DNA of 64,000 nt from positions 62,001 through 126,000 of the IMG/VR virus record IMGVR_UViG_3300032268_000986; one strand, written 5' to 3'. The notes under the pieces were generated by a model that was given only the letters and a program-made list of their open reading frames with translations, was not told where the DNA came from and ran no database searches. The translations under genes were made by a program, and so were the position numbers. Below, one piece after another: positions 16,981 to 52,614 of the stretch; position 1 is the stretch's first letter; the number at the start of each line of letters is the position of its first letter.

Positions 16981-18264
16981 TTAGTTTTTCTCTTCCTCAT
17001 AGTAGGCGTATTGACCCCAGGGCGGAACAATGGTAGTGGTGCCATGCAAGATCCATACAGTGTCTGCATAATTCTCATCGCCCCACGAACCAAACGGGTA
17101 ACCATCTGTAAACACCACAAGACGCTTGGGCTCAATTTCTTCTGCCTTCAAGTAGTTGTAGATGGCATCAAAGTCTGTACCACCACCGCCCTTGACTTCG
17201 TAGTCGCAGATTGAATCCAAGTTGTCTGAATCATACTGAGCAGGATTGTATGCCTCAGTATCAAACGTGATCACATGAATTCGGTATGCCGGGAACGAGT
17301 CCATGATGCCTTGGATCTCACCCAAGAAGTCCTTGAGCATGGTCTCGCTGATCGAGCCCGAAGCGTCCAAGGCAACTGCAATGTCAATCATGGGATCCAG
17401 TTTCATGCCAGGCATGATGGCATCTTGGTGCCAGCCTTTGCGTCCGGCTCGCATCCAAGTGTAGTCGCTCTTGATGGTGCTCTCCAACTGCATGCGAAGC
17501 AGTTCGCGCCAGTTCATCTTGGGCTCAGTGAGCTCCTCGATCAGTCGCTTGACACCGGCTGGGATATTGCCGGCACCGTCCACTGTGGCCGCAGCCGCCA
17601 GCATGGCTTCTTTGATCTCGTCCTTGATGGCCTGGCGATCAGACTCGCTTAACCGGGGACGGCCTTTGCCACTGCCGTCAACTTCTTCTCCATCTCCATC
17701 ACCGTCGGGGTCACCATTGCCGTCCAGGTGCTCGTCAATCATTTGATCCAGCAATTTGCCAATGTCAATTTTTTCGGCTTTTTCGTACAAGATATCGTAG
17801 ATCTCTTCCGAGCTCATGCCGTCATACTTGGGATCATGCAGGCAAGGCACTGTGGTGATCTTTTCACCCACCTTGTGTTTGATCAAGTCTGCGTTCACAG
17901 CAAAGTCATTGGCAATGTTAAACAGCTGAGGATCACGCTCACCACGACGTCCAAAGTGATCATAAACACAATGCAACACTTCGTGTCCAAACAAGAACTC
18001 AATCTCTTTGGGACGAAGCATCTGAATAAAGCGAGAATTGTAATAGAAATTTCTGCCATCAGTTGCGGCTGTGCCACACCATTCATCGGCATTTATCAGT
18101 TTGAGTCGAGTTGCCAAATTACCAAAGAAGCTGGCACGGAGCAACAGGCCCACACGAGCAGTGATCAGTTTTTCACGTACCTCGCGATCTATCTTGGGAT
18201 CAGTCTTGCCAATGAGATTTTTAAACTTGGCTTTGTCTTCTTTGTTAGCGGTGGTTGCAGTCAT
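16981..18264 (-). CDS. Metallopeptidase-like plus VWA domain protein (DUF2201 type)
   Basis: TAATDG, HEVLH, DASGS MIDAS, GGGGTDF, VFTDG. Confidence 0.9.
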   Translation of the reverse strand: MTATTANKEDKAKFKNLIGKTDPKIDREVREKLITARVGLLLRASFFGNLATRLKLINADEWCGTAATDGRNFYYNSRFIQMLRPKEIEFLFGHEVLHCVYDHFGRRGERDPQLFNIANDFAVNADLIKHKVGEKITTVPCLHDPKYDGMSSEEIYDILYEKAEKIDIGKLLDQMIDEHLDGNGDPDGDGDGEEVDGSGKGRPRLSESDRQAIKDEIKEAMLAAAATVDGAGNIPAGVKRLIEELTEPKMNWRELLRMQLESTIKSDYTWMRAGRKGWHQDAIMPGMKLDPMIDIAVALDASGSISETMLKDFLGEIQGIMDSFPAYRIHVITFDTEAYNPAQYDSDNLDSICDYEVKGGGGTDFDAIYNYLKAEEIEPKRLVVFTDGYPFGSWGDENYADTVWILHGTTTIVPPWGQYAYYEEEKN

Positions 18265-18311
18265 GCGAGTCCTTTGTTTGGTATGTGTATATTATAGCAG
18301 ATTGCAGTTTA

Positions 18312-18554
18312 TCAGTCAATGTCTGCAGAAACCCGGCCTTCCGCAGGGTCATATGTCAGGTAAACCTTGGTACTGTCACGGCCGCCTTGCTCATCGACCT
18401 TGTAGACCACAGTGTAGCAAAATTGTCCACCATTGGTGATGCCCAGGAACCGAGCACCTGTAAACTCCATGTCTTGAGCCTTTTTGTCCAGAGCCCGTTG
18501 CAGGGCCTGGTGTGTGAATGTTGTGAGTGTTTTGAGTTTCTCTGCTGTGATCAT
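18312..18554 (-). CDS. Hypothetical protein
   Basis: SD ggag before MITAEKL. Confidence 0.6.
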   Translation of the reverse strand: MITAEKLKTLTTFTHQALQRALDKKAQDMEFTGARFLGITNGGQFCYTVVYKVDEQGGRDSTKVYLTYDPAEGRVSADID

Positions 18555-18555
18555 A

Positions 18556-18834
18556 TCACATGCTCCAGTAAGTTTCGCTAGCCGGGTTGCAACACCAAGG
18601 TGTGTCTGCGTCAATCTCCACAGACTTGCCCGACATCAAATTCTTCACAGTGATCTTGGGAGCCTGGTAGGTGTCGCGAGCCACAATGTGCAATTGGCTT
18701 TCGTTCCAACCTGCTTTGCGGCAGAGTCGAGTGCGGGTGGCCTGTGCGGCACCCCAAGTTTTGTATGCACGGGTCTTGTTGGGACCGTCTGTAACAATTA
18801 AACCAGTACCTTTTGCAACAATCACATAACTCAT
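18556..18834 (-). CDS. Hypothetical protein
   Basis: SD aaggag and own promoter. Confidence 0.7.
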   Translation of the reverse strand: MSYVIVAKGTGLIVTDGPNKTRAYKTWGAAQATRTRLCRKAGWNESQLHIVARDTYQAPKITVKNLMSGKSVEIDADTPWCCNPASETYWSM

Positions 18835-18864
18835 TTGGGGCTCCTTTTTGCTGTCTATGTGTAT

Positions 18865-18893
18865 ATTATAGCAAAATGGCGAATTTCGGTCAA
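18865..18893 (-). promoter_or_regulatory. Sigma70-type promoter TTGACC-N17-TATAAT
   Basis: ggtcaa 18888-93 and attata 18865-70; same architecture at 21216-44, 21680-708, 21998-22026, 22916-44, 24453-81, 49183-211, 49577-605, 49980-50008. Confidence 0.85.
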
Positions 18894-18929
18894 CCAAAAA
18901 AAGTGTTGTAAAAATGTAACACTTTAGTA

Positions 18930-19214
18930 CTACAAATTCAAGTACTTTAGCTGGAACCAAGACTGTGCTGGTTCACTGTAAAAATCCAGATGAACCTGCT
19001 CTTCGTAGTACATGCTGGGACCATTGGGAGTTGGGGGTTCCGCTGGCACTAGGCCTTTGTGATAGCGATACACAAACCCCAGCTCACGTCGCATGCGTGG
19101 GCGTATGGCCATGCCCATGCCGTAGTCTCGTAGAATCTGAGCATACACATCCGACCACTCTCCAGGCCGGTGAAAAACAATCAAGTTCTTTTTTACGGTG
19201 ATACGGGGTGGCAT
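18930..19214 (-). CDS. Hypothetical protein
   Basis: ORF in co-directional run. Confidence 0.6.
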   Translation of the reverse strand: MPPRITVKKNLIVFHRPGEWSDVYAQILRDYGMGMAIRPRMRRELGFVYRYHKGLVPAEPPTPNGPSMYYEEQVHLDFYSEPAQSWFQLKYLNL

Positions 19215-19522
19215 AGTACAAACCAACTCAGTGTTTTGTCTTCGTCTATATAGATACGATAGTCGCCGTACTTGACAGCATACGCCCAGGTGGAATTGAT
19301 GTCGTCCTCTTGATAGTCCTCTTGATTGCGAATTTTGTTGCGCATCATTTGATAACGAGTCTCAACATCTTGGCTCCACCCAAATTGCTGGTTGAACCAA
19401 CGCCGGCAACGATCAAAGTCCAACACGCCAGTGCCATGACCATGGTCTTTGTTGAACTCCACAAGGTACCGGTAACCATGCCGAGTGTACCGGTTGTCCA
19501 TCTTGGTAATTTTATATTTCAT
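19193..19522 (-). CDS. Hypothetical protein
   Basis: ORF in co-directional run. Confidence 0.65.
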   Translation of the reverse strand: MKYKITKMDNRYTRHGYRYLVEFNKDHGHGTGVLDFDRCRRWFNQQFGWSQDVETRYQMMRNKIRNQEDYQEDDINSTWAYAVKYGDYRIYIDEDKTLSWFVLCHPVSP

Positions 19523-19592
19523 ATGATGTCAAGTAGAAAAGGGCTGTGTAGCACACAGCCCGTGTATTTGATCTACACAGCCCTTCCCTGAC

Positions 19593-20675
19593 TTAGGCCG
19601 AAGCCTGCAAGATGTACTTGCCAAAGCGCGAGTGGAACTCGTCAAAGTTCTTGAGCTTGGTGGGCAGGAAGGGCAAGTCGTATGTGGTCAATGCAATACG
19701 AGCACCCATCACTGTCAACTCAGTCTCAAAGTTCTTCATCATGTAGCCCAGGAAGTTGTCGGCCATTTCATGGAACTTCTTGTCTTCCACTTTGTTTTCA
19801 ACTGCACTCTTGAGCTCATAGCACATGGAGATCACCAGGCTGTACATGGCCGACACTTCTTTGACCTGCAAGTCCTTGACCTTGCCTGCCAAGATGTCTG
19901 CAGGATTGGGCATGCGGCTTGCAACCTTGCGGTGAGCCATGAACTTCACTGCCAAGCCTTCACCAATTGTGCCTGCAATCAAGTTGGTCAGGGTATCGTT
20001 GTCGCCGTCGTCATCCAACAGCTGGCTCACAAAGGTCCATGAGCGCGGTGTAGCAAACGAACGCGAGCTAGACTTGGAATCAAAGTCATACAAGTCTTGC
20101 TTGGCAAAACTCAGGTAACCCACCACGTCTTTGTGGATGCGGTTTTGCACTGCCCACTCTTGCCAAGATGCAAAGTCCACCTTCATCTCTTGGTGGATAA
20201 AGCGGTTGGCCAACGGAGTCGGCATGCGATATGTAACACCTTTGTCGCTTTCACGGTTGCCTGCGGCAACCATCACAACATTGTCGGGCAAGAAATACTT
20301 GCCAATGCGTCGATTCAAAATCAACTGATAAGCCGCACTCTGCACACTCGGAGCAGCCGAGTTCATCTCGTCCAAGAACAGCACCACAATAGGATACTGG
20401 CTGGCAGTTTCTGCATCGGGCAAGTCCACTGGAGCCGCCCAGTCCATTTTACCCGAGTCTTTGTTGTAGAAAGGAATACCACGAATGTCTGTGGGCTCCA
20501 TCTGACCCAGGCGCAGATCATACATGATGCCGCCAAGATCTCGAGTGATGCCTTCCACCAGCTCACTCTTGCCAATTCCGGGAGGACCCCACAGGAACAA
20601 AGGACGCTTGACTTGGAATGCTTTGAGCAGGGATTTTTTTGCTTGAACAGCGGTAACGGTGCGTGTATCTGACAT
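19593..20675 (-). CDS. MoxR-family AAA+ ATPase
   Basis: Walker A GPPGIGKS, Walker B LFLDEMN, AAGN, LANRF, ATPRSW. Confidence 0.92.
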   Translation of the reverse strand: MSDTRTVTAVQAKKSLLKAFQVKRPLFLWGPPGIGKSELVEGITRDLGGIMYDLRLGQMEPTDIRGIPFYNKDSGKMDWAAPVDLPDAETASQYPIVVLFLDEMNSAAPSVQSAAYQLILNRRIGKYFLPDNVVMVAAGNRESDKGVTYRMPTPLANRFIHQEMKVDFASWQEWAVQNRIHKDVVGYLSFAKQDLYDFDSKSSSRSFATPRSWTFVSQLLDDDGDNDTLTNLIAGTIGEGLAVKFMAHRKVASRMPNPADILAGKVKDLQVKEVSAMYSLVISMCYELKSAVENKVEDKKFHEMADNFLGYMMKNFETELTVMGARIALTTYDLPFLPTKLKNFDEFHSRFGKYILQASA

Positions 20676-30005: not shown

Positions 30006-30707
30006 ATGCAAACAATTTTATATATTCTCATTGTAACACACATTACCATTGCATGTGTTACGCTATTTTTACATCGAAGTCAAGCACACCGAGGAGTTGA
30101 GTTTCATCCTGTGGTGAGTCATTTCATGCGATTCTGGCTATGGCTAACGACTGGCATGGTCACTCGCCAATGGGTTGCCGTACACCGCAAGCATCATAGA
30201 TTTACCGAACAGGATGGTGATCCGCACAGTCCACATGTGCATGGTTTTTGGCGTGTGCTGTTCACAGGTGCAGGTCTGTACCACTTGGCCAGCAAGGACT
30301 CGGCCATGGTCACACAATACGGCGCAGGAACACCCGATGACTGGGTAGAGCGCAACATATACTCCAAACACAGCAAACTAGGTATCTTGCTCATGTTGCT
30401 GATAGACATGGTATTGTTTGGTTGGTGGGGGTTGGTGGTATGGGGCATACAAATGATATGGATCCCATTCTGGGCAGCAGGAGTTATCAATGGAATTGGA
30501 CACTGGACCGGATACCGTAATGGTATTACTAAAGATCATAGTCGTAATATTAGTCCACTGGGCATTGTTATTGGTGGCGAAGAACTACACAACAATCACC
30601 ACTTGGATCCAGCAAATCCTCGTCTCAGTCGTCGCTGGTTTGAATTTGATATAGGCTGGGCGTACATACGCCTGTTGAGTGTGCTGAGACTGGCACACAC
30701 GAGATAA
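30006..30707 (+). CDS. Delta-9 fatty acid desaturase
   Basis: His boxes HRSQAH, HRKHH, GEELHNNHH; TM segments. Confidence 0.93.
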   Translation: MQTILYILIVTHITIACVTLFLHRSQAHRGVEFHPVVSHFMRFWLWLTTGMVTRQWVAVHRKHHRFTEQDGDPHSPHVHGFWRVLFTGAGLYHLASKDSAMVTQYGAGTPDDWVERNIYSKHSKLGILLMLLIDMVLFGWWGLVVWGIQMIWIPFWAAGVINGIGHWTGYRNGITKDHSRNISPLGIVIGGEELHNNHHLDPANPRLSRRWFEFDIGWAYIRLLSVLRLAHTR

Positions 30708-33300: not shown

Positions 33301-33328
33301 ATTTATTTTTACATACAAAAATAAAAAA

Positions 33329-33500
33329 TGCAAACAATCCGGTTTCGCCAGGGCCTCTGCAAGTCATCGACAATAGATAACTTTTCACACCGGAAACAGA
33401 GATAGACCTCTCATCTACCCAACTGGTCCATGTTAGATTAGTCGGATTACCAGTCCAAGAGCTAACTGGGGTATTACCCCCGCACGAGTCTTTGTTTGCA
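33329..33500 (-). ncRNA. Candidate stem-closed ncRNA
   Basis: Terminal 9-bp TGCAAACAA/TTGTTTGCA; internal hairpins. Confidence 0.4.
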
Positions 33501-33504
33501 AAAA

Positions 33505-33575
33505 TGGCGGGCCTGTACAGGAATCGAACCTGCCATCCGGCGCTTTGGACACGCCACGAATCTCCAGAGTGACCC
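33505..33575 (-). tRNA. Atypical tRNA-like gene, anticodon CCA (Trp), degenerate D arm
   Basis: T arm GCAGG-TTCGATT-CCTGT, anticodon arm GGCGT-GTCCAAA-GCGCC, 5-bp acceptor, CCA. Confidence 0.55.
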
Positions 33576-33580
33576 ATGAT

Positions 33581-34000: not shown

Positions 34001-34089
34001 TGGAGGAAGGCTAGTAGAATCGAACTCTATGCGCTTTCGCACACCTTCTGTTTTCAAGACAGAGTCAGGCCCAGCCTGATTAACCTTCC
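34001..34089 (-). tRNA. tRNA-Ser(TGA), atypical fold
   Basis: TCTGT-CTTGAAA-ACAGA, long variable arm, 5-bp D stem, U73. Confidence 0.75.
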
Positions 34090-34098
34090 ATTATTCAA

Positions 34099-34266
34099 TT
34101 ACTTTTTTTCTCGACGTGTGCTTTTTTGATGCACTTGTTCTTGAGCAACTTTCACATAACTGCGAATAAATGCACCACGTCTATGGTTATCCAAAATGGT
34201 GCAAGCCAGAGTTTTAACTGGTTTGCCAATCTTTACTGCACGTGAATCATAACCTCTGCAAGTCAT
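34099..34266 (-). CDS. 55-aa basic hypothetical protein
   Basis: SD aagga, MTCRGYDSRAVK... Confidence 0.65.
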   Translation of the reverse strand: MTCRGYDSRAVKIGKPVKTLACTILDNHRRGAFIRSYVKVAQEQVHQKSTRREKK

Positions 34267-34531: not shown

Positions 34532-34560
34532 ATTATACAGCCGACAATCGCAGTTGTCAA
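34532..34560 (-). promoter_or_regulatory. Consensus sigma70 promoter TTGACA-N17-TATAAT inside tRNA array
   Basis: Perfect hexamers and 17-nt spacer; the same at 35497-35525 and 47247-47275. Confidence 0.85.
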
Positions 34561-34647: not shown

Positions 34648-34722
34648 TGGGGTGTCGTATGAGAATCGAACTCATGACAGCGGAATCACAACCCGCGGTT
34701 TTGCCACTAAACTAACGTCACC
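34648..34722 (-). tRNA. tRNA-His(GTG)
   Basis: GTG anticodon, G-1:C73. Confidence 0.92.
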
Positions 34723-34842
34723 ATATAGAAACACTTTCAATATCAGTTCCTTGCTGGCACAAAGAACCTTTCGCCTCTGCCAGGAGACCGAACATTGGCC
34801 GCGCTCATTGGCGGTTACTGTCCGTCAAAAATGTTTTTATAT
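34723..34842 (-). ncRNA. Candidate kissing-loop ncRNA
   Basis: Terminal AT-rich stem; two hairpin loops CTGGCA and TGCCAG are exact complements. Confidence 0.6.
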
Positions 34843-34915
34843 GGTAGGGGCACAGAGAATCGAACTCTGATTAATAGGTTAAAAGCCTACTACTTTGCCG
34901 TTAAGTTATACCCCC
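34842..34915 (-). tRNA. tRNA-Lys(TTT)
   Basis: TAGG-CTTTTAA-CCTA. Confidence 0.92.
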
Positions 34916-35054: not shown

Positions 35055-35075
35055 CTAACGTTTGGCACGTTTCAT
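35055..35075 (-). CDS. Mini-ORF MKRAKR with strong SD
   Basis: AAGGAGA-acgac-ATG AAA CGT GCC AAA CGT TAG. Confidence 0.55.
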   Translation of the reverse strand: MKRAKR

Positions 35076-35098
35076 GTCGTTCTCCTTGTTTAAAAAAT

Positions 35099-35488: not shown

Positions 35489-35533
35489 ATAATACAATTA
35501 TATAGTCAACAGGTGTTGCTGTCAACTAAAACT

Positions 35534-35781: not shown

Positions 35782-35855
35782 TGGCATCCCGCCAGGGACT
35801 CGAACCCCGACCAACGGTTTTGGAGACCGACATGCTGCCATTACACCAGCGAGAC
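35782..35855 (-). tRNA. tRNA-Trp(CCA)
   Basis: CGGT-CTCCAAA-ACCG, G73. Confidence 0.92.
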
Positions 35856-35869
35856 ACGTTAAATACTAC

Positions 35870-36484
35870 ATGAAAATCAATTTTACCACTGCATCACCTG
35901 CCATCTATTATCTTGACACTGTGGAACCCCCGCAACCTTGGCCCACCTTGTTACACGAATTGCAACAGTTATTATGGCAACAGGAACCAACCATTGGCGG
36001 TCAAGATCACTTTGCTGTGAGTTGCCTGGGCGCACATACCATACCATACCATTCTGCACCGCATAAATTTCAACAACACTTTGTTGCAGACACGTTCAAA
36101 CAACAAGTGCTAGATCAGCTGTTTGACAATGAAGAATTCATGATGCAGTGGGCCAACCCTGAACGCAAACATGTCAATGACATAACTGTGTTATGTGTGA
36201 ATTGGGTTGCAACCCCGCCAAGATATCGCAATCATCCTTGGCATGTTGACAGTCGCTGTCAAATGGCACATGGCATGATCTATATCACCGAGCAAGACAA
36301 TGTTTTACACAGCACTTGGTTCGATACTGGGCGTAACGGACATTTGTTGCGCATTCCGTCGGCACCGGGGCAAGGTTGGATGGTAGTAAACACTGACCAA
36401 GCCAGACACTGTGCTATGAACGACACTGACCGCACACGTTACAGTCTCAAATTCAGTCTTGAGCTAAAAGTGAGAAAATTTTAA
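35870..36484 (+). CDS. Putative 2OG-Fe(II) oxygenase, antisense to the tRNA array
   Basis: WHVD, GMIY, distal H, R.SL. Confidence 0.65.
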   Translation: MKINFTTASPAIYYLDTVEPPQPWPTLLHELQQLLWQQEPTIGGQDHFAVSCLGAHTIPYHSAPHKFQQHFVADTFKQQVLDQLFDNEEFMMQWANPERKHVNDITVLCVNWVATPPRYRNHPWHVDSRCQMAHGMIYITEQDNVLHSTWFDTGRNGHLLRIPSAPGQGWMVVNTDQARHCAMNDTDRTRYSLKFSLELKVRKF

Positions 36485-36687
36485 CACACTCTTTGGAATG
36501 TGTGTATTAAAACAGACTGTATGCTTAGGGAATAACATTTCTGTCAAGCGACCGGCAACGGGTACGCAATCTGTTTTAATACGCTCGGATTTTTTTATGT
36601 ACAAGAACATAAGCCATCCCCGAGGCCGCCCATTTGAAGCATGTTTAGAGTGCGCTTCGGGATCTCGTTTCCCATGTACACTAAATG

Positions 36688-36720
36688 AAAAACCCTGGAG
36701 TTTTTAGTTCCAGGGTCTTT
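36688..36720 (-). terminator. Intrinsic terminator (putative attenuator)
   Basis: ACCCTGGA/TCCAGGGT stem followed by U tract. Confidence 0.75.
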
Positions 36721-36748
36721 TGAATTTTTCTTGAGTCAGTTAATCTAG

Positions 36749-36883
36749 TTAACCATCCCAACCTTCAAAGGACCCCGACACTCCTGGAATACTATTCAAG
36801 CCCGCAAAACCGCGTGACCAGACAGACGCTGTCTGGAGCATTGTGGATTTTGTCAGCAGTGAATGATTCGTTGTGTTCATCAT
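36749..36883 (-). CDS. 44-aa putative leader peptide MMNTTNHSLLTKSTMLQTASVWSRGFAGLNSIPGVSGSFEGWDG
   Basis: Starts about 7 nt after TTGACA-N17-TACAAT (36891-36919); its 3' end is complementary to the terminator 5' arm. Confidence 0.65.
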   Translation of the reverse strand: MMNTTNHSLLTKSTMLQTASVWSRGFAGLNSIPGVSGSFEGWDG

Positions 36884-36936
36884 AAGTCCTATTGTATAGT
36901 ATTTAGCAATTGTTGTCAACCACTAAAGTGTTTTAT

Positions 36937-37119
36937 TTATCCATTTGTAGTCATTGTGTATGTTTCACTCATGTGAACCATGTACGCACGACTGGTGTTT
37001 GTTTCGTTATGGCTCTTGATAAAATCTCGAGCCAAGGCCTCACTATCAAAATACACAGTGCCACCAACAGTCATGTCGGTTTCTCTTTGTTCGTTGACAA
37101 TAACAACTTTGTATTTCAT
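36937..37119 (-). CDS. Hypothetical protein
   Basis: 60-aa ORF after tRNA. Confidence 0.5.
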   Translation of the reverse strand: MKYKVVIVNEQRETDMTVGGTVYFDSEALARDFIKSHNETNTSRAYMVHMSETYTMTTNG

Positions 37120-37126
37120 AGTTAAT

Positions 37127-37202
37127 TGGTTGCGGGACTTGGATTCGAACCAAGGATGGCAAAGGCTTATGAGACCTCGCTAGTGACCAGACCTTCCCCG
37201 CG
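37127..37202 (-). tRNA. Initiator-like tRNA-fMet(CAT), atypical
   Basis: CGCGGGG...CCCGCAACCA with C1:A72 mismatch; weak D arm. Confidence 0.75.
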
Positions 37203-37227
37203 CTATTCAGTTACAGTTATTTATACA

Positions 37228-37305
37228 TGGAGTCTCGGGAGGGATTTGAACCCACGAATCAACGGATTTGCAATCCGAGCCATTGAGCCACTCTGGTACC
37301 GAGAC
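37228..37305 (-). tRNA. tRNA-Cys(GCA)
   Basis: CGGA-TTGCAAA-TCCG, U73. Confidence 0.92.
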
Positions 37306-37312
37306 ATTACCC

Positions 37313-37390
37313 TATATGTAAACACACTGTCATCACCACCATACTTCCACGTCTTACGGCAGATGTGTCTGTCCTGTGTGTTTACATATA
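37313..37390 (-). ncRNA. Candidate stem-closed small RNA
   Basis: Perfect 15-bp terminal inverted repeat TATATGTAAACACAC. Confidence 0.45.
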
Positions 37391-37401
37391 AGCATGTTGA
37401 A

Positions 37402-37623
37402 TTTGAGAGCCTACGCCGCTTTTATCGTAGATTTATTCAGGACTTACCGGCCGCCTAGCCTGACCTCGAGCACGATGGATATCACTTGGGCTTCGTCCAG
37501 CGTAGTCTCCTTTACAGACCTCCGCAGTTGCCCGCGGGTGGGAGTTGAACCCATTTGCCTTTTACTGCTTTGGTCCTTCGAAGAAACCTAGACAGCGTGA
37601 CTTCACTTGCTGACACTCTCAAA
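37402..37623 (-). ncRNA. Candidate structured ncRNA (~220 nt)
   Basis: TTTGAGAG/CTCTCAAA ends; T-loop-like TGGG-TTCAACT-CCCA; several hairpins. Confidence 0.55.
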
Positions 37624-37626
37624 ACT

Positions 37627-37702
37627 TGGCGGTCCTAGGGGGTAACGATCCCCACTCTTACGGCGTGACAAGCCGTCGTGCGTCCATGAACACTTTAGGA
37701 CC
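37627..37702 (-). tRNA. tRNA-Asp(GTC), atypical T loop
   Basis: ACGGC-TTGTCAC-GCCGT; T loop ATCGTTA. Confidence 0.85.
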
Positions 37703-37705
37703 AAT

Positions 37706-37856
37706 TTTTATAGTCAAGCACCGAGAATGCCAATTTAGGAGTCCGGTGCTTCCGTTCCAAAGCCGATGCAGTTATGTCAGGATCCGTTCCCGGCCGGTTG
37801 GACCCGAATAGTGTATGCGTCCATACACGATACCTTATCGATGCTTGACTATAAAA
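37706..37856 (-). ncRNA. Candidate stem-closed ncRNA (~150 nt)
   Basis: Perfect 15-bp terminal stem TTTTATAGTCAAGCA. Confidence 0.5.
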
Positions 37857-37860
37857 ACAA

Positions 37861-38062
37861 AAATGCTCTGCATCCCCCGGCGGTAATTGTAGTGCATCAT
37901 CTCTTGGATTTCTCCGCAATTCTCACACACCTTCCACCCGCTTCCCGACAGGGACCGTTATCGCATTGCCAGCGGCCTTTCGGTAAGAAGACTACCACCC
38001 TTGGCTATCACACCACTTCTCATCTTGCGGGTCACAATATCTGCTGATTAGGCAGAACGTTT
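37861..38062 (-). ncRNA. Candidate structured ncRNA (~200 nt)
   Basis: Terminal stem; long-range ACCCGC/GCGGGT pairing; GNRA-like loops. Confidence 0.55.
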
Positions 38063-38148
38063 TGGTGGAGACGGATGGATTCGAACCACCGCGCTTTTTA
38101 GGGGCCAGATTTACAGTCTGGTGCAATCAACCACTCTGCCACATCTCC
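38063..38148 (-). tRNA. tRNA-Tyr(GTA)
   Basis: CCAGA-CTGTAAA-TCTGG, variable arm. Confidence 0.94.
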
Positions 38149-38221
38149 AAAAAAGGTAGGATCACGGTTGCAGGACCTAGTGCTCTTGCGAGGAAGTATC
38201 CAGGCGATGTGATCCTAAAAA

Positions 38222-38297
38222 TGGTACACGATACGGGAATCGAACCCGTCTTACCAACGTGAAAGGCTGGTGTCCTAAACCGATAGACGAATCGTGC
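38222..38297 (-). tRNA. tRNA-Glu(TTC)
   Basis: CCAGC-CTTTCAC-GTTGG. Confidence 0.93.
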
Positions 38298-38300
38298 ATG

Positions 38301-38980: not shown

Positions 38981-40057
38981 TCAGAGATCCAACAACACAT
39001 GATGCTCGCTCACGCTGCCGATGTAGTCACACCGAACTTGGCTCTGGTTGAACCAACCAGGGTGCTGGTGTTGCAATAGGTCACAGTAGGCTTCAAACTT
39101 TGCCAATGTGGTTTGACCCTGGGAACTCAGCGCACAGTTATTGATCAACAGCAGTTCCTTGCGGTCAAATTGCCAGTCATGTTGATGTGACACTGTGCCA
39201 TTGATTCTTGGAAACCCCCACTTTTTATCCAGGCAGTTTCCTGGTGTGGGGAACCCCAAGGCAGCTTTGATGTCAAGCCCCTGCACTCCCTGTTGCGCAA
39301 GATCATGTAGGCCGTATGCATACGCAAACGCTAGGTTAGGGTTGCGTTGGTCACAGAAAAAGTGAATCATGCGAGGAGTCATGAAATTCAAATTGAACCG
39401 GTTGTCCATCCAGTAAAATTTGTTGCCATCTAACACTGGCATGGCAGCACCACCAACATTGACATAATTATCTTGTTGTAGATGTGGATAACACTCAATG
39501 GCCTGCAACGGGTTAGTGGTGCATGGGCGCAGTGTTTTGTGTCGCAACCACCGATGTTCTACATCTTCCATGTACCAAGCATAGTGCTCGGGCAAGATAT
39601 CATAGTACACCACTTGAGCTCGACTGCGGTATTGTTGCAGAGTCTTGGCCAGCACGGACCTAAAGGGAAACACATCAATTTCTATATTGACATACTCATC
39701 CACAGCACCAGGGAATCTACGATACACTGCAATTTCATCAACATCTGCCCCAGTTTCTAAAAATGCCATCAGGGCAGCATGACTGTCCATGCCACCGCTG
39801 TACCACAGGCGTATGCGACTGTGATGATCACGTATGAGTTGGGCCTGATCCAAGCACAGTTGCCAAAAAGTTTTTTGCGGTCGTAATCCGGCTAGGCTGT
39901 GGGACCAAACACGAAACCCCGGTGCGGCATGCCCCAGTTCTTGAGCTTTTCTCAGCGCATCAATCTTGCTGTGTCCATGCCATGTGCTCACATGGTAATG
40001 AGGTCCTGTGTAGCCCTGCCCTGGATCAATCTTTTCTGTGACTTTTACTGGTGTCAT
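38981..40057 (-). CDS. PP-loop (adenine nucleotide alpha-hydrolase-like) protein
   Basis: RLWYSGGMDS. Confidence 0.6.
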   Translation of the reverse strand: MTPVKVTEKIDPGQGYTGPHYHVSTWHGHSKIDALRKAQELGHAAPGFRVWSHSLAGLRPQKTFWQLCLDQAQLIRDHHSRIRLWYSGGMDSHAALMAFLETGADVDEIAVYRRFPGAVDEYVNIEIDVFPFRSVLAKTLQQYRSRAQVVYYDILPEHYAWYMEDVEHRWLRHKTLRPCTTNPLQAIECYPHLQQDNYVNVGGAAMPVLDGNKFYWMDNRFNLNFMTPRMIHFFCDQRNPNLAFAYAYGLHDLAQQGVQGLDIKAALGFPTPGNCLDKKWGFPRINGTVSHQHDWQFDRKELLLINNCALSSQGQTTLAKFEAYCDLLQHQHPGWFNQSQVRCDYIGSVSEHHVLLDL

Positions 40058-41355
40058 GAGTATAGTTGAATCAATCGATTCGTTATGCCATTGAGTTGAT
40101 TTTCTAACAGCAGCACCAGCACCAAGGGCATGAAATCCACTCGACGAGCTGTAATCCAGCCCACTGCACCACTGGCTGCAAACACCAGCATGTAGTACAG
40201 AGTCTGATCGCTACGCCAGCCCTGATACATCACAGTGGCAGTCAACAGCACAATCAACACTGATACTATGGCATTGTAGTACTGTTGGAACCAGCTCAGT
40301 AATTGTTTTACCACTGACGAGCACACCCAGGCCACAACAGCACATCCGATCAGTAAACTTGCAGTTACCAGGCCCACCATGTTCCAGTCAAGATTGGTGG
40401 CACGCCACCCATGACTGGCCAAGATATCCAATATCACCAACTCACTGGGCTGTACCGCTAGGCCCAACAACACAAACGGAATCAGGCTTGAAACCTGGCT
40501 GGCATTGTTGGCAGCTTCTGCAGCCGTGAGACGAGACAGACTGTCTGTGAGATGCGGTTGTTTGCGAAATCTTGATTCCACAGAGTGTGCCAAATTGGAT
40601 GTGATGATACCGCCCACGTATGGCACAAGCCCACACACAAATCCCACTGCACTGCCGCGCAGTGCAGATAGCCAGGCAAACGATCTTTGCGTGTGACCAT
40701 TGATGTCAATGGGCATGCCCATGGGGGATTGCTGGTGCTTGATCAACAGCATGGTGGGCACTGCATACACTCCCAGTATCACCGGGGTAATTGGTATGCC
40801 TCCGGCCAAGTACACATTGCCCAGAGTCAAAAAGTCCTGACCAGTCTGCATGTTGTGTCCTACTGCGCCTATAATCCAGCCCAGTGCAATCAACCCAAGA
40901 TTTATCATGGCTCTGTTGCCGGGCCATGCAGTGACAAATGTCAGTGTGACAAACAACAACACTGCCATGACTTCGGTTCTAAACAGCATGGGCCAGGCCT
41001 GTCCTTGGTGCAAGCAAATCAACATTGCGGAGAGACTCGCTGCCATGCCAATCAAGCTGGCTCGGGCAGTGTCTTTCAATGCTTGCTGGATAGCATTGTG
41101 ACCAATAATGATATTGCGTTCACGCAAGGCAGGTGCAGATGTTACTTCACCTAGAGTGCCAAAGCACAGCGCAGCCACTGATCCTGAAAAGTCTCGAGCC
41201 GAAATCATCACAGCGTAAAATGCAATCAACACAGCCGGACTCATCATGTTCAGCATGGGATACAGTATCAACAACATAAACACCGGACCCAGACCAGGCA
41301 TGAGCCCTACCAAGATTCCAATGGCTGGTGCCAACAGCAACAACAGCAGTTCCAT
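40054..41355 (-). CDS. Tripartite tricarboxylate transporter TctA-like permease
   Basis: GILVGLMPGLG, GFVCGLVPYVG, AAEAANNA; polytopic membrane protein. Confidence 0.82.
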   Translation of the reverse strand: MELLLLLLAPAIGILVGLMPGLGPVFMLLILYPMLNMMSPAVLIAFYAVMISARDFSGSVAALCFGTLGEVTSAPALRERNIIIGHNAIQQALKDTARASLIGMAASLSAMLICLHQGQAWPMLFRTEVMAVLLFVTLTFVTAWPGNRAMINLGLIALGWIIGAVGHNMQTGQDFLTLGNVYLAGGIPITPVILGVYAVPTMLLIKHQQSPMGMPIDINGHTQRSFAWLSALRGSAVGFVCGLVPYVGGIITSNLAHSVESRFRKQPHLTDSLSRLTAAEAANNASQVSSLIPFVLLGLAVQPSELVILDILASHGWRATNLDWNMVGLVTASLLIGCAVVAWVCSSVVKQLLSWFQQYYNAIVSVLIVLLTATVMYQGWRSDQTLYYMLVFAASGAVGWITARRVDFMPLVLVLLLENQLNGITNRLIQLYS

Positions 41356-42998: not shown

Positions 42999-43070
42999 TG
43001 TTTTTCCTTATAAAAGTAAGGGCTTTTGACCCTGAGCAATTATATATGCAACTGCATGTTGCAGTCAAGA

Positions 43071-43097
43071 AGAAAGGTCAGATTAACTGACCTTTCT
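43071..43097 (-). terminator. Hairpin at the end of the tmRNA coding piece
   Basis: AGAAAGGTCAG/CTGACCTTTCT. Confidence 0.6.
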
Positions 43098-43500
43098 GGT
43101 GGTTTCTGTTACGAGGTATTTCCTACCCTAAGCAGTGTTTAGGCTGCTAATGCGAACTGTGAGTCGTTTGCGTTTACTTTTTTGCTTGATTAACGGTCAT
43201 CGCCTACCGTGCTGTCCACTCTGTTACTTGTTGCCCTGTCGAAACTATGCAGGCCCATCATAAAGAAACTTCTTCAAATCTAGATGCCAAAAGCACAATA
43301 CGCAAACCGGCATCTGTTTGAATTACTACTCCATTACCCATGGTATAGACAATATCATAGTCTTTGCCAATTGTTAGTTCCTTATGCACAGCTTTAACAT
43401 CAGGTAATGATTTAAGTATCATAAACTTCCTTATGGTGGACCTGGGGGGATTCGCACCCCCGTCCAGAACACTGTTCTCATCACTTCATACAGCAATAAC
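43098..43500 (-). ncRNA. ssrA: Circularly permuted (two-piece) tmRNA, tag ANDSQFALAA
   Basis: Acceptor piece ending CAGGTCCACCA (43434) precedes 5' piece GGGCCTG...TTTCGAC (starts 43256); G3:U70; tag frame 43139-43171; outer ends approximate. Confidence 0.92.
43258..43422 (-). CDS. 54-aa ORF inside the tmRNA intervening segment
   Basis: SD AAGGA; MILKSLPDVKAVHKELTIGKDYDIVYTMGNGVVIQTDAGLRIVLLASRFEEVSL. Confidence 0.6.
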   Translation of the reverse strand: MILKSLPDVKAVHKELTIGKDYDIVYTMGNGVVIQTDAGLRIVLLASRFEEVSL

Positions 43501-43502
43501 TT

Positions 43503-43661
43503 TTAGATCTGCACCACGGTCCATTTGGTTGTAAATGGTTTGCCTTCGGCCTTGTGTTTCAGTATCTTCGCAAACTCTTTTTCACGGAGTTTGGCAATGG
43601 TTTCTGTATCGTGGTCGAAGCAAGCCTTGTACAAACGAGAAACCAATTTCTTTTGTTTCAT
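43503..43661 (-). CDS. 52-aa basic hypothetical protein
   Basis: SD aaggagg; [14 protein letters not shown]... Confidence 0.6.
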
Positions 43662-50035: not shown

Positions 50036-51109
50036 ATGACACAAGACCTTTACCACGATATCTACACTTCCGAAGTGTTTGAAGCCAGTCAATGCATCTG
50101 GCACGAAAACAATCTCATGAATTTCTTGCACAGCATGTTGATCAAGCTGGGCTATGAACCTGTGAAAGATGGTCACAAGACCTGGCGCCGGGGCGACAAA
50201 ACAGTGGTGGTGTGCCTGGTGGACGACTATATCTCCACCACAGAAAATTATGATGTGCCAGTGGCCTATCGCTTTGATCGCAACACCACAGTGATCACTG
50301 ACAACTTTGTCACCAGTCCCACCTTGTACCGAGTATTTCAATTGCCCTCGTCATGGTTTGGTATCTACAACTATGAGCCCAAGCAAACAGACTACAATCC
50401 CACACGCAGATTCAACTTTTCAGTGAATCGCATTGACAGCAAACGACTTTTGTTGTTGCTGGAAATTGCTCTGCGCAGTGAAAAATACCCAGACCGAGAC
50501 ACCCTGGATTTCGTCAACTTCAACTGCTGGTCTTGGGAAGGTGACAATGCCACACCCGAGGGCTTGCGTGACAGCTTTGTTCGAGTGTACGAGGCCCTGG
50601 AACCGCAGTACCGAGAAGTATATCAAGAAACATTCCAGCGTCTGTTGGAAAACATGCCATTTCGCAATCATGACATGACCATGGAACAAGCACACTTGTC
50701 GGCCTATGTGAACATGGTGGCCGAAACCTACAGCTCGGACACATCCATTGCACTAAGTGAAAAAACATTTCGTGCCTTGGTGACCGCGGCACCCTGGCAA
50801 TTGTACGCCGGCAAACATGCCGTGGCATACCTGGAAAGTCTGGGGTTTGATACCTTACGTGATGTTGTGAATCACAATTATGACACCATCATTGAAAACA
50901 AGACCGCAGCCTATGGTGACAAACTGGTGGAGTGGATCTTTTCTGGTGCCGACACATTCACACGCTTGAGCAGCATGGATCGCACTGAACTGCGCCATCG
51001 TTGTTTGACCGCAGCCAGAACCAATCAAGCAGTGCTGGAAAGCATGAGTCGTCGTTGGCCCACTGAGTTTGCGGCCTGGCTGCCCGCAGTGATTGATCAC
51101 ATCCGGTAA
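50036..51109 (+). CDS. Putative glycosyltransferase (GT10-like family)
   Basis: AET...LSEKTFRAL...LGFD...NYD. Confidence 0.55.
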   Translation: MTQDLYHDIYTSEVFEASQCIWHENNLMNFLHSMLIKLGYEPVKDGHKTWRRGDKTVVVCLVDDYISTTENYDVPVAYRFDRNTTVITDNFVTSPTLYRVFQLPSSWFGIYNYEPKQTDYNPTRRFNFSVNRIDSKRLLLLLEIALRSEKYPDRDTLDFVNFNCWSWEGDNATPEGLRDSFVRVYEALEPQYREVYQETFQRLLENMPFRNHDMTMEQAHLSAYVNMVAETYSSDTSIALSEKTFRALVTAAPWQLYAGKHAVAYLESLGFDTLRDVVNHNYDTIIENKTAAYGDKLVEWIFSGADTFTRLSSMDRTELRHRCLTAARTNQAVLESMSRRWPTEFAAWLPAVIDHIR

Positions 51110-52614
51110 TGTGCGGCGTCCTGTTGATTCAAGGCGCAGTATCGCCTGAACGCCAGCAGGCTGCACTGTCTAGATTGCGCCAACGTGGTCCTGATTTTGA
51201 AGTAGTGCATCAAACAGGATCATGTTTGCTGGCGCAGTCGGTGTTGCACATCACCGGCACTAGAGATTTTTATCACCAACCTCGAGACGACGCCTTTGTG
51301 TACAACGGCGAAATTTACAACTGGCGTGATTTTGGTGACACAGCCAACGACACTGAAACTGCATGGATGGCAGCCCGGCAGGATCCGGGCATGTTTGCCA
51401 AGTTTCACGGTCCCTGGGCCTGGGCCAGAGCCACTCAAGATCATGTTTGGTATGCCACAGATCCACAGGGAGAACGCTATCTTTATCGATATCACACCCG
51501 AGACCTCACAGTGGTGGCCAGTGAAGCCGCAGTGGTGCAGGACATAGTGGCAAGTCTGCATCAGGACTGTGAGTACAACAACAAGTGCTGGACCCTGCAA
51601 GATCAAACTCCCTGGCAAGATATTCATCGCTTAGAGCCCGGCAGACTCTACTGTGATCATGAGCCACAGCAGAGCCTGGACACAGTATGGAATTGGATCA
51701 GCCCAGTTGACTGCACTGCTCAGGAAGCACAACAAGAGTTTCAGCGACTGTGGCATCAGGTCATCAGCGACATGACGCCCACGTGTGACTTTGCCATCAG
51801 TTATTCCGGCGGTGTTGACAGCAGTCTGATCTTGAGTCAGTTGCCCAATGCTGAATTGGTCACGGTCAACATGCTGGGCAAAGACCCCATTGTGGATCGA
51901 GTCACTGAATTCCTTGCCTCGGTACAACTGCAAAATCTCAATCAAATCGATGTAGACGTTGAACAATATGCAGGCGAATACCGGGCCCTGATTGAACGCA
52001 CACAGATGCCGGCACAGAGCTGGAGTTTTGTGGGCAAATGGTTGGTGGCCAAACACACACAATCTCGGGTGTTGTTCACTGGCCTGGCCGCAGACGAGTT
52101 GTTTGGCGGCTATGGCATCTATCAACAACTTGAGTATTCCACACAAGGCAGCACCAGTCCCTACAGCAGCGACGACCATGCAGGATTATGGGATCAGTGC
52201 TTGTCGGTGTACCAGGGCGATCCTAGACCGGCCACCTTGCTCATGGACTATTGGTATCAAGTAGTGGGGTGCGATGCCCCGGGTCAGGATAGAATTGCCG
52301 GTGCCTGGGGACGGGAAACACGCAACCCATTCATGCATCAATCAATCATGCGGTTTGCATTGAACCTGCCCTGGCATTTGAGAGTAAATACAACATGCAA
52401 GCCTGTGCTGATAAATGAGTTCTTGCAGCATTGGCCCAGAGAGTTGCTGTTGCCCAAACAGGGATTTGCAGGTCATGCAAATGACAGTCTGCCCTGGATG
52501 GCAGTAGATGTGGCAAACACTGGTGATCGCTATCGGGATTGGAAACAAATTGCTAAAACGACTTATTACAACTACACACAAACACCAACAGCCCTGGCGC
52601 CACTGGATAACTGA
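51109..52614 (+). CDS. Asparagine synthetase B-like glutamine amidotransferase
   Basis: N-terminal MCG, RGPD, YNGEIYN, SGGVDSS, ADELFGGY. Confidence 0.92.
   Translation: MCGVLLIQGAVSPERQQAALSRLRQRGPDFEVVHQTGSCLLAQSVLHITGTRDFYHQPRDDAFVYNGEIYNWRDFGDTANDTETAWMAARQDPGMFAKFHGPWAWARATQDHVWYATDPQGERYLYRYHTRDLTVVASEAAVVQDIVASLHQDCEYNNKCWTLQDQTPWQDIHRLEPGRLYCDHEPQQSLDTVWNWISPVDCTAQEAQQEFQRLWHQVISDMTPTCDFAISYSGGVDSSLILSQLPNAELVTVNMLGKDPIVDRVTEFLASVQLQNLNQIDVDVEQYAGEYRALIERTQMPAQSWSFVGKWLVAKHTQSRVLFTGLAADELFGGYGIYQQLEYSTQGSTSPYSSDDHAGLWDQCLSVYQGDPRPATLLMDYWYQVVGCDAPGQDRIAGAWGRETRNPFMHQSIMRFALNLPWHLRVNTTCKPVLINEFLQHWPRELLLPKQGFAGHANDSLPWMAVDVANTGDRYRDWKQIAKTTYYNYTQTPTALAPLDN

What the first reader, a model, noticed from the sequence alone, without database searches (positions are those of the whole stretch)
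34723..34842. 120-nt RNA with a perfect 6-bp kissing loop between tRNA-Lys and tRNA-His
On the minus strand the hairpins GUCUC-CUGGCA-GAGGC and GUUCUUUG-UGCCAG-CAAGGAAC have exactly complementary loops. They sit in a three-way junction closed by CAAUG(U)UCGG/CUGAUAUUG, within an AU-rich terminal stem abutting both tRNAs. This compact architecture is typical of aptamers or ribozymes.
Basis: seen in the sequence. Interest (0 to 1): 0.62.

Follow-up and report, generated by a model that had tools for sequence, protein, structure and literature searches.

The report
Self-pairing small RNA in phage tRNA-array
A previously undescribed 120-nt structured RNA, present once in the tRNA gene arrays of uncultivated giant phages, has two hairpin loops that evolution keeps complementary to each other, most likely so that copies of the RNA can clasp one another.

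Summary
The two hairpins and their complementary 6-nt loops (CUGGCA / UGCCAG) are real, at the stated coordinates, on the tRNA strand. Searches that did not constrain the loops recovered 40 distinct homologues, all from uncultivated phage or metagenome contigs. The 26 checked lie in tRNA arrays. The loops covary: 30 CUGGCA/UGCCAG, 6 CUGACA/UGUCAG, 3 CUGGUA/UACCAG, and one with a single A.C mismatch. The stems covary as well, and nothing in Rfam 15 matches. The fold is a four-way junction: terminal helix P1 plus hairpins A, B and C. P1 is not specific to this RNA. It is a shared "frame" that encloses at least 59 other cargo sequences in related arrays. A full 6-bp kiss within one molecule looks sterically impossible, because a coaxial stack of about 55 A would have to be bridged by the 4-nt GAAA linker (35 A at most). 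My best reading is a stable small RNA cut out by tRNA processing that pairs loop-to-loop between molecules, as phi29 pRNA does. Neither that pairing mode nor any biological role has been tested. There is no evidence for an aptamer or ribozyme. It is a new RNA family and moderately to highly interesting.

The parts
34723..34842 (-). Whole element (120 nt). The first A, at 34842, is also A76 of tRNA-Lys(UUU). G-1 of tRNA-His follows at 34722.
   Evidence: CM R1 hit of 136.5 bits, E 6e-29
34825..34841 (-). P1 5' strand (UAUA-A-AAACAUUUUUGA), the 5' half of the shared frame helix
   Evidence: P1 is 99% paired in 40 sequences and 8 of 16 pairs covary; frame statistics
34789..34824 (-). Hairpin A: lower stem CGGACA/UGUUCG, internal loop, upper stem CCGC/GCGG, variable apical loop
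   Evidence: 4 of 6 lower-stem pairs show double changes; RNAalifold
34773..34788 (-). Hairpin B: 5-bp stem GUCUC/GAGGC
   Evidence: 100% paired in 40 sequences, 3 of 5 pairs covary
34778..34783 (-). Loop B, CUGGCA: one strand of the loop-loop helix
   Evidence: 99.6% of cells paired with loop C; G-C to A-U in 7 sequences and C-G to U-A in 3 sequences
34769..34772 (-). Linker GAAA between B and C (GAAA, GAAC or GAAAA in homologues)
   Evidence: alignment A4; length used in the steric estimate
34745..34768 (-). Hairpin C: 9-bp stem GGUUCUUUG/CAAGGAACU. In most homologues a tandem U.U sits at stem pairs 6-7 of 9, counted from the junction.
   Evidence: 6 of 9 pairs covary; L026 and L002 have Watson-Crick pairs at the U.U positions
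34754..34759 (-). Loop C, UGCCAG: the other strand of the loop-loop helix
34741..34744 (-). Linker GAUA between C and P1
34724..34740 (-). P1 3' strand (UUGAAAGUGUUU-C-UAUA), the 3' half of the frame. It has three conserved G.U wobbles, which makes the helix strand-specific.
35497..35525 (-). Consensus sigma-70-type promoter (TTGACA-17-TATAAT, 12 of 12) that would drive the transcription unit holding the element
   Evidence: a consensus match only
34532..34560 (-). Next consensus sigma-70-type promoter, downstream of tRNA-His and tRNA-Met; it bounds the unit

Best explanation
This is a member of a new family of ~120-nt non-coding RNAs encoded once per tRNA array in a clade of uncultivated giant phages.

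Shown: it is encoded on the same strand as the tRNAs and directly abuts them. It folds as a four-way junction made of a 17-bp terminal helix P1 and hairpins A, B and C. The 6-nt loops of B and C are held complementary by compensatory evolution. P1 is a generic frame helix that encloses many unrelated cargo RNAs in these arrays.

Inferred:
1. The RNA is co-transcribed with the tRNAs from a strong sigma-70-type promoter.
2. It is released by the ordinary tRNA-processing cuts: RNase P at the 5' end of the downstream tRNA, and an endonucleolytic cut after the CCA of the upstream tRNA.
3. The paired 5' and 3' ends in P1 protect it from exonucleases.
4. Stems B (5 bp) and C (9 bp) are joined by only 4 nt, so their loops cannot form the 6-bp helix within one molecule. 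Loop B of one molecule therefore pairs with loop C of another and vice versa, hand in hand as in phi29 pRNA, giving a closed dimer or a small ring. In a closed dimer the two stacks are equal in length: B(5)+6+C'(9) = C(9)+6+B'(5).

What the assembly does for the phage is not known. The nearest precedents are the self-assembling ROOL and GOLLD RNAs, which also sit beside phage tRNA islands.
For: Family and fold:
- 40 distinct homologues were found with loop-independent patterns and a covariance model.
- Of the 46 pairs of the structure tested (loop-loop helix included), 93% of cells are paired, 26 pairs show double changes, and 0 of 500 shuffles reach any of the five observed measures.
- RNAalifold independently gives the same four-way junction.

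Loop-loop pairing:
- 239 of 240 cells are paired, with G-C to A-U in 7 sequences and C-G to U-A in 3.
- On a tree built without the loop columns, these changes fall in at least 3 separate clades.
- Among 59 framed cargo classes, only this one has complementary loops.

RNA rather than DNA:
- P1 has conserved G.U wobbles, and the sense strand is more stable than the antisense in 26 of 26.

Context:
- All 26 loci checked are tRNA arrays, with the element on the tRNA strand, in single copy, with gaps of -1 to 1 nt upstream and 0 to 16 nt downstream in most. The neighbouring tRNAs vary.
- Consensus promoters bracket the unit.

Pairing between molecules rather than within one:
- In a straight coaxial B-kiss-C stack, the two ends the linker must join are about 55 A apart, against at most 35 A for 4 nt. 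A bend of more than 100 degrees would be needed.
- In guanidine-II, head-to-head kissing hairpins have ends about 50 A apart and need linkers of 7-40 nt (PMC5558903).
- In the divergent subfamily B is 6 bp and C is 7 bp, so the sum B+C is roughly kept (13 against 14) while the difference is not (1 against 4). That argues against side-by-side loops within one molecule.

Precedents:
- pRNA forms multimers by intermolecular kissing between two loops of identical molecules (PMC4201828).
- ROOL and GOLLD lie near tRNA islands and oligomerise through intermolecular kissing loops (PMC12286853).
- A GOLLD RNA lies in the same array as the L001 member.
Against: No experiment or transcript data were available, so expression, end points, stability and oligomeric state are all inferred.

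Covariation cannot tell pairing within a molecule from pairing between molecules.

Only 2 of the 6 loop pairs vary. The helix could therefore be shorter than 6 bp, which would weaken the steric argument. The steric estimate also uses ideal A-form geometry, not a 3D model.

One homologue (L219) carries an A.C mismatch in the loop-loop helix.

The tandem U.U in stem C could act as a hinge.

No function is shown.
Confidence: 0.5

Rival explanations
1. The two loops kiss within one molecule and lock a compact globular fold that serves as a ligand-binding aptamer or a ribozyme.
For: The loop complementarity and its covariation fit pairing within a molecule just as well. The junction nucleotides are conserved (UGACG, UCGGU, GCGAA, RAUAU), which suggests a specific tertiary fold. 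The lysine riboswitch is an example of a 6-bp kiss within one molecule (my own knowledge).
Against: The 4-5 nt linker cannot span the ~53-55 A coaxial stack. The stem lengths are unequal, and their difference is not conserved (4 bp in the main family, 1 bp in the subfamily), which argues against side-by-side loops. There is no expression platform or regulated ORF, because tRNAs lie on both sides. No riboswitch or ribozyme family matches at E<=10. No hammerhead-type core is present: CUGAUA lacks the essential G8 and is in the wrong order.
Confidence: 0.22
2. A conformational switch. CUGGCA and UGCCAG form an ordinary nested helix in an alternative fold that competes with hairpins B and C, for instance to time processing of the neighbouring tRNAs.
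For: A fold that uses the 6-bp helix as a nested stem exists, at -34.2 kcal/mol.
Against: That fold is 5.4 kcal/mol worse than the MFE. Stems B and C are both strongly supported by covariation, and their MFE pair probabilities are 0.87-1.0. The alternative explains none of the stem covariation.
Confidence: 0.07
3. A passive spacer or a relic of a remodelled tRNA gene. It would be a structured insulator that only helps tRNA processing and has no function of its own. Its topology is cloverleaf-like: four-way junction, 5-bp stem B, 4-nt 'variable' linker.
For: It shares the generic frame with many other cargos. Some framed cargos contain T-arm-like GGUUCGAAUCC sequences. The four-way-junction topology resembles a cloverleaf.
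Against: A passive spacer would not keep two loops complementary through at least 3 independent double substitutions. Nor would it keep the junction sequence invariant across contigs whose stems have diverged. Ordinary tRNA-tRNA spacers here are only 3-8 nt. ARAGORN and the Rfam tRNA model do not recognise it.
Confidence: 0.1
4. A DNA-level signal. The inverted repeat CTGGCA-N22-TGCCAG would be a binding site for a dimeric DNA-binding protein, and the half-sites would change together.
For: Symmetric half-sites also 'covary' when they are read on DNA.
Against: The half-sites sit exactly in the loops of two hairpins whose stems show RNA-type covariation, including G.U pairs. The structure is strand-specific (26 of 26). 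Half-site changes would also need matching changes in the protein.
Confidence: 0.03
5. A short protein-coding gene (the 21-codon ORF MSAANVRSPGRGERFFVPARN in the window).
For: An ATG-initiated ORF spans hairpins A to C in the window.
Against: The ORF is absent from 21 of 40 homologues and lies in different frames in the others. It has no Shine-Dalgarno sequence.
Confidence: 0.01

Closest known systems
phi29-family prohead/packaging RNA (pRNA, Rfam RF00044)
   Same: Both are phage-encoded with a functional size of about 120 nt. In both, the 5' and 3' ends pair in a terminal helix, a multi-helix junction presents two hairpins, and the loops of those hairpins are complementary to each other.
   Different: There is no sequence or CM similarity (no Rfam hit at E<=10). 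This RNA has a four-way rather than a three-way junction, and 6 loop pairs where pRNAs have 2-5. It is embedded in a tRNA array of a ~343-kb phage rather than in a phi29-like phage genome. There is no evidence of any role in packaging.
GOLLD and ROOL RNAs
   Same: They are phage or prophage RNAs typically beside tRNA islands, of unknown function, that homo-oligomerise through intermolecular kissing loops conserved by covariation (PMC12286853). A bona fide GOLLD lies in the same array as the L001 member.
   Different: They are much larger (GOLLD members often exceed 800 nt) and form 8- to 14-mer cages. They share no similarity with this RNA, and neither is detected in the window.
T4 stable RNAs species 1 and 2 (rnaC, rnaD) in the T4 tRNA cluster
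   Different: No relationship was tested. The frame helix and the complementary loops are not known features of the T4 RNAs.
Guanidine-II (mini-ykkC) riboswitch
   Same: It has two hairpins in one transcript whose loops kiss head-to-head (PMC5558903).
   Different: Its linker is 7-40 nt, long enough for a kiss within the molecule. Its ACGR tetraloops form only 2 C-G pairs, and it lies in a 5' UTR with a Shine-Dalgarno platform. Here the linker is 4-5 nt and there is no regulated gene.

Membership tests
phi29 pRNA (RF00044) | Match to the Rfam covariance model | tested here: not met
   cmscan against all 4227 Rfam 15 families with permissive filters at E<=10 gave no pRNA hit on the window element or on a divergent member
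phi29 pRNA (RF00044) | Three-way junction presenting the two kissing hairpins | tested here: not met
   Covariation and RNAalifold give a four-way junction with an extra hairpin A
phi29 pRNA (RF00044) | Two loops of the same molecule are mutually complementary and covary | tested here: met
   239 of 240 cells paired; 2 positions with double changes
phi29 pRNA (RF00044) | The loop pairing is intermolecular and yields multimers | not testable with these tools
   Only a geometric estimate favours pairing between molecules. It needs a native gel, AUC or trans-complementation.
phi29 pRNA (RF00044) | Encoded by a small phi29-like phage and bound to the portal and packaging ATPase | tested here: not met
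   The window matches a 342,865-bp IMG/VR contig, and the element sits inside a 33-tRNA array
GOLLD (RF02032) / ROOL | Match to the Rfam model; large size (GOLLD members often exceed 800 nt) | tested here: not met
   No hit in the window at gathering score or at E<=1 in 35800-38300. The element is 120 nt.
GOLLD (RF02032) / ROOL | Location beside phage tRNA islands | tested here: met
   26 of 26 members lie in tRNA arrays
tRNA / tRNA-like | Cloverleaf recognised by ARAGORN or Rfam RF00005, with T-loop and D-loop conserved residues | tested here: not met
   Neither tool calls it. Its loops are 6 nt with no T-loop motif. The loop variants would correspond to anticodons, such as ACC, that are not normally used in bacteria.
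Small self-cleaving ribozymes (hammerhead, twister, pistol, hatchet, HDV-like) | Match to the family model or catalytic core | tested here: not met
   No Rfam hit at E<=10. CUGAUA...GAAA is not in hammerhead order and lacks G8 (read directly from the sequence).
Riboswitch / cis-regulatory aptamer | Lies in a 5' UTR with an expression platform controlling a downstream ORF | tested here: not met
   It is flanked directly by tRNAs on both sides, and the neighbours vary between phages
Framed tRNA-array cassettes (a grouping defined here) | Terminal helix AUAU-NN-AAACA[CU].../...[GA]UGUUU-NN-AUAU of at least 16 bp, on the tRNA strand, inside a tRNA array | tested here: met
   The element has the frame. 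145 framed cassettes were found in 87 tRNA-array loci. Positions 12-16, which were not part of the search pattern, are 93-100% paired and covary.

The most novel reading that the evidence does not exclude
The RNA is a natural self-assembling building block. Its two loops clasp those of other copies hand in hand to form a closed dimer or ring. That would make it, after phi29 pRNA, a second small phage RNA that oligomerises by intermolecular kissing, and a miniature relative in kind of the ROOL and GOLLD cages found in the same tRNA islands. It would also be one cargo in a modular system in which a common processing or stability 'frame' helix lets these phages express dozens of different small structured RNAs from their tRNA arrays.
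Probability: 0.4. Interest if true: 0.8.

Novelty: new variant of a known kind. Interest (0 to 1): 0.66.

Why it matters
Natural RNAs that function as homo-oligomers are rare. pRNA was long the only small example, and ROOL, GOLLD and OLE were added in 2025. All the phage examples still lack a known function, and the large ones sit beside tRNA islands. A 120-nt RNA with one covarying loop-loop contact would be a far more tractable model for asking why phages place self-associating RNAs in tRNA arrays.

The shared frame helix matters separately. It suggests that tRNA arrays of giant freshwater phages are expression platforms for a large, unexplored repertoire of small structured RNAs: at least 59 cargo classes in a small sample. 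That repertoire would be missed by annotation that lists only tRNAs.

Tried and rejected
- **Rfam.** The gathering-score scan of the whole window gave only tRNAs, tmRNA and one tRNA-Sec-model hit. Permissive E<=10 scans of the element and of a divergent member gave nothing relevant.
- **GenBank phages.** blastn of the element and of a divergent member found no match. The only protein-level relative, Ralstonia phage RsoM2USA, is distant. In the 30 kb fetched around its tRNA-Gly match only protein-coding genes are annotated; I did not scan that stretch for tRNAs or for the element.
- **Bacterial and archaeal genomes.** All 10 hits to the 3'-end pattern were chance matches, mostly in coding sequence.
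- **Pattern GGTCTC-N6-GAGGCGAAAGG.** The extra hits were one unrelated coding sequence.
- **First frame pattern.** It looked non-specific at first. Many of its hits turned out to be other framed cassettes in tRNA arrays.
Rejected: 75% paired, no compensatory change.
- **Coding ORF.** Rejected.
- **Anticodon-stem-loop mimicry or tRNA anticodon binding.** The loops read U-GGC-A and U-GCC-A. I considered this and rejected it. The loop variants (GAC/GUC, GGU/ACC) would change tRNA identity, ACC is not a normal bacterial anticodon, and the loops have 6 nt rather than 7.
- **Hammerhead reading of CGAAA...CUGAUA.** Rejected on element order and the missing G8.
- **K-turn or loop-E reading of GAAA/GAUA.** Not resolvable with these tools.
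- **Screen of all 59 framed cargo classes for complementary hairpin loops.** Only this family has them.
- **GOLLD in the window.** Not found.

Full report
**What is in the window.** The window carries 33 tRNA genes and a permuted tmRNA, all on the minus strand between about 29 and 47 kb. An exact 23-mer from the finding matches a 342,865-bp IMG/VR contig (L003), and the ~340 nt printed around it are identical to the window. So this is a giant uncultivated phage. The only GenBank relative is a distant one, Ralstonia phage RsoM2USA. The finding is the 120-nt gap between tRNA-Lys(UUU) (34842-34915) and tRNA-His (34648-34721). Ordinary tRNA-tRNA spacers in this array are only 3-8 nt.

**Checking the observation.** On the minus strand the two hairpins are exactly as described: GUCUC-CUGGCA-GAGGC and GGUUCUUUG-UGCCAG-CAAGGAACU, with loops that are perfect reverse complements. 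The spacer folds to -39.1 kcal/mol, z = -3.44 against dinucleotide shuffles. No Rfam 15 family matches, even at E<=10.

**Homologues.** I searched with patterns that leave both loops free:
- the 3' end of the element in IMG/VR, JGI metagenomes and GTDB genomes;
- two core patterns with N at all loop positions;
- a covariance model built from the first 22 sequences.

This gave 40 distinct sequences, all from viral or metagenome contigs. None came from bacterial genomes and none from GenBank phages.

**Secondary structure.** Covariation supports a four-way junction:
- terminal helix P1, 99% paired, 8 of 16 pairs with double changes;
- hairpin A lower stem, 4 of 6 pairs with double changes;
- hairpin B, 100% paired, 3 of 5 pairs with double changes;
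- hairpin C, 6 of 9 pairs with double changes.

For the structure as a whole, 0 of 500 shuffles reach the observed value on any of the five measures, and slid controls drop to 35-56% paired. RNAalifold on an independent MAFFT alignment predicts the same junction. The structure is strand-specific. P1 has three conserved G.U wobbles, and the sense strand is more stable than the antisense in 26 of 26 members. There is no conserved ORF.

**The loop-loop helix.** The loop pairs are:

| Loop B / loop C | Distinct sequences |
|---|---|
| CUGGCA / UGCCAG | 30 |
| CUGACA / UGUCAG | 6 |
| CUGGUA / UACCAG | 3 |
| CUAACA / UGUCAG (one A.C mismatch, L219) | 1 |

That is 239 of 240 cells paired. On a tree built without the loop columns, the G-C to A-U change appears in the distant L056 and again in the L127/L128/L136/L150 group, which also contains a G-C member (L140). 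The C-G to U-A change appears in the L131/L145/L146 group. This makes at least three independent double substitutions. The loops therefore pair with each other. They do not mimic or bind particular tRNA anticodon loops, because the variants would switch tRNA identity and include ACC.

**Pairing within one molecule or between molecules.** All six loop nucleotides of each hairpin are in the helix. The only known geometry for that is a coaxial stem-kiss-stem stack (my knowledge of the TAR-TAR* and RNA I/RNA II complexes). In such a stack the 3' end of B and the 5' end of C lie about 55 A apart. The GAAA linker can span at most about 35 A, so a bend of more than 100 degrees would be needed. The guanidine-II structure paper gives the same arithmetic for head-to-head kissing hairpins: about 50 A, 7.2 A per nucleotide, and natural linkers of 7-40 nt (PMC5558903).

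A divergent subfamily has B = 6 bp, C = 7 bp and a GAAAA linker (L081, L227, L006, L230, L233, L056). The difference in stem length therefore changes from 4 bp to 1 bp, which would break side-by-side loop contact within one molecule. The sum stays near 13-14.

A nested alternative fold that uses the same six pairs is 5.4 kcal/mol worse than the MFE and contradicts the stem covariation.

The most economical model is pairing between molecules. B of one copy pairs with C of another and vice versa, and this closes geometrically because both stacks have the same length. This is an inference, because covariation cannot separate the two modes. phi29 pRNA is the direct precedent: two complementary loops on one ~120-nt junction RNA that pair between molecules (PMC4201828).

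**Context and biogenesis.**
- In all 26 loci checked, the element lies in a tRNA array, on the strand of every tRNA, and once per locus. Its first A is usually the A76 of the upstream tRNA, and its last U lies 0-16 nt before the next tRNA.
- The neighbours vary: Lys/His is commonest, but Gly/Gly, Asp/Ala, Leu/Glu, Lys/Ser and Lys/Tyr also occur. The element therefore behaves like an independent gene in the array, not like an appendage of one tRNA.
- In the window it sits in a unit bracketed by two perfect TTGACA-17-TATAAT promoters.
- Release by RNase P at the downstream tRNA and by a cut after the upstream CCA, with the ends sealed in P1, is the natural reading, but it is untested.

**The frame.** P1 is not private to this RNA. 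A search for AUAU-NN-AAACA ... UGUUU-NN-AUAU in the fetched tRNA-array loci found 145 cassettes in 87 loci (120 unique sequences), with cargo of about 35-100 nt that falls into 59 sequence clusters. The family studied here is the largest cluster. Positions 12-16 of the frame, which were not in the search pattern, are 93-100% paired and covary. Position 6 is an A.C mismatch in 81 of 120. Some cargos contain T-arm-like sequences. Only this family has complementary hairpin loops. The window has two more framed cassettes (37314-37389 and a variant at 36502-36584). I interpret it as a processing or stability stalk, or a common protein-binding site, analogous to the stems that flank rRNAs in their precursors. 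That reading is an inference.

**Relation to known systems.** It is not a member of pRNA, GOLLD, ROOL, tRNA, or any ribozyme or riboswitch family (see the membership tests). It works most like pRNA, with complementary loops on a junction scaffold. It lives where ROOL and GOLLD live, and a bona fide GOLLD (198.9 bits) lies about 4.8 kb away in the same array as the L001 member. ROOL and GOLLD assemble through intermolecular kissing loops that had first been read as tertiary contacts from covariation (PMC12286853). That history is a caution against assuming pairing within the molecule here.

**Verdict.** The detailed junction and the aptamer/ribozyme reading are not supported. This is a new RNA family: no Rfam match, no literature found. 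It belongs to a known kind, the self-pairing phage non-coding RNAs beside tRNA islands. Its likely mode of action, pairing between molecules, is inferred, and its biological role is unknown.

Noticed in passing
window 37314-37389 (-), 36502-36584 (-); L001 6292-6391, 6494-6583; L004 9915-10000; L068 2272-2379; many other loci: A shared 'frame' helix (AUAU-NN-AAACA[CU].../...[GA]UGUUU-NN-AUAU, at least 16 bp, usually with an A.C mismatch at position 6) encloses at least 59 unrelated cargo sequences of about 35-100 nt in tRNA arrays of related phages. I found 145 cassettes in 87 loci. Some cargos carry T-arm-like GGUUCGAAUCC motifs.
   Followed up: partly
L001 10884-11346 (-): A GOLLD RNA (RF02032, 198.9 bits, E 1e-54) with an embedded tRNA-Lys(UUU) lies in the same tRNA array as the L001 member of the family. 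No GOLLD is detectable in the window itself (E<=1 scan of 35800-38300).
   Followed up: partly
window 35055-35087 (-): A mini-ORF, MKRAKR*, lies between tRNA-Arg(ACG) and tRNA-Lys(CUU). It has a consensus AAGGAG Shine-Dalgarno 6 nt upstream and a hairpin after it. Its AAA and CGU codons are those read by tRNAs encoded nearby: tRNA-Arg(ACG) just upstream and tRNA-Lys(UUU) two genes downstream. L068 and L073 have short basic ORFs at the equivalent place. It could be a leader-peptide-like element.
   Followed up: no
window 34099-34266 (-): A 55-codon basic ORF (MTCRGYDSRAVKIGKPVKTL...) with a Shine-Dalgarno-like AAAGGAA lies inside the tRNA array, between tRNA-Pro(UGG) and the tRNA-Ser-like gene.
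   Followed up: no
window 34005-34089 (-): The Rfam 'tRNA-Sec' hit (48.0 bits against a cut-off of 47), missed by ARAGORN, has the anticodon loop CUUGAAA. The anticodon is therefore UGA, so it is most likely a long-arm tRNA-Ser(UGA), not tRNA-Sec. L001 has tRNA-Ser(UGA) in the same part of its array.
   Followed up: partly
window 35497-35525 (-), 34532-34560 (-), 36891-36919 (-): Two perfect (12 of 12) and one 11-of-12 sigma-70 consensus promoters lie inside the tRNA array. They split it into short transcription units presumably read by the host RNA polymerase.
   Followed up: no
window 43048-43526 (-): A two-piece (permuted) tmRNA with tag peptide ANDSQFALAA (RF04321, 135.9 bits). This points to a host from a lineage that uses permuted tmRNA (alpha- or beta-proteobacteria, or cyanobacteria).
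   Followed up: no
L001 5905-6005 (-); L004 10285-10390 (+); also L143, L155: In these relatives tRNA-His is enclosed in an extra 12-bp stem (AAACUUCUUUGG ... CCAAAGAAGUUU), so the element lies 16 nt upstream of the tRNA rather than abutting it. In L001 and L004 a ~170-nt tRNA-like element ending in a T-arm plus CACCA precedes the family member.
   Followed up: no
window 37306-37626 and 37703-38062 (-); 33301-33580 (-): Long non-coding gaps (280-360 nt) in the array contain GC-rich hairpins and T-arm-like sequences that no tool calls. They may be further uncharacterised structured RNAs.
   Followed up: no
window 30006-30704 (+), 40057-41355 (-), 51109-52611 (+), 16984-20675 (-): Auxiliary genes lie around the array: a fatty-acid desaturase, a TctA-family transporter, an asparagine-synthase-like protein, and a MoxR-type AAA ATPase paired with a VWA/metallopeptidase (DUF2201) protein.
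   Followed up: no
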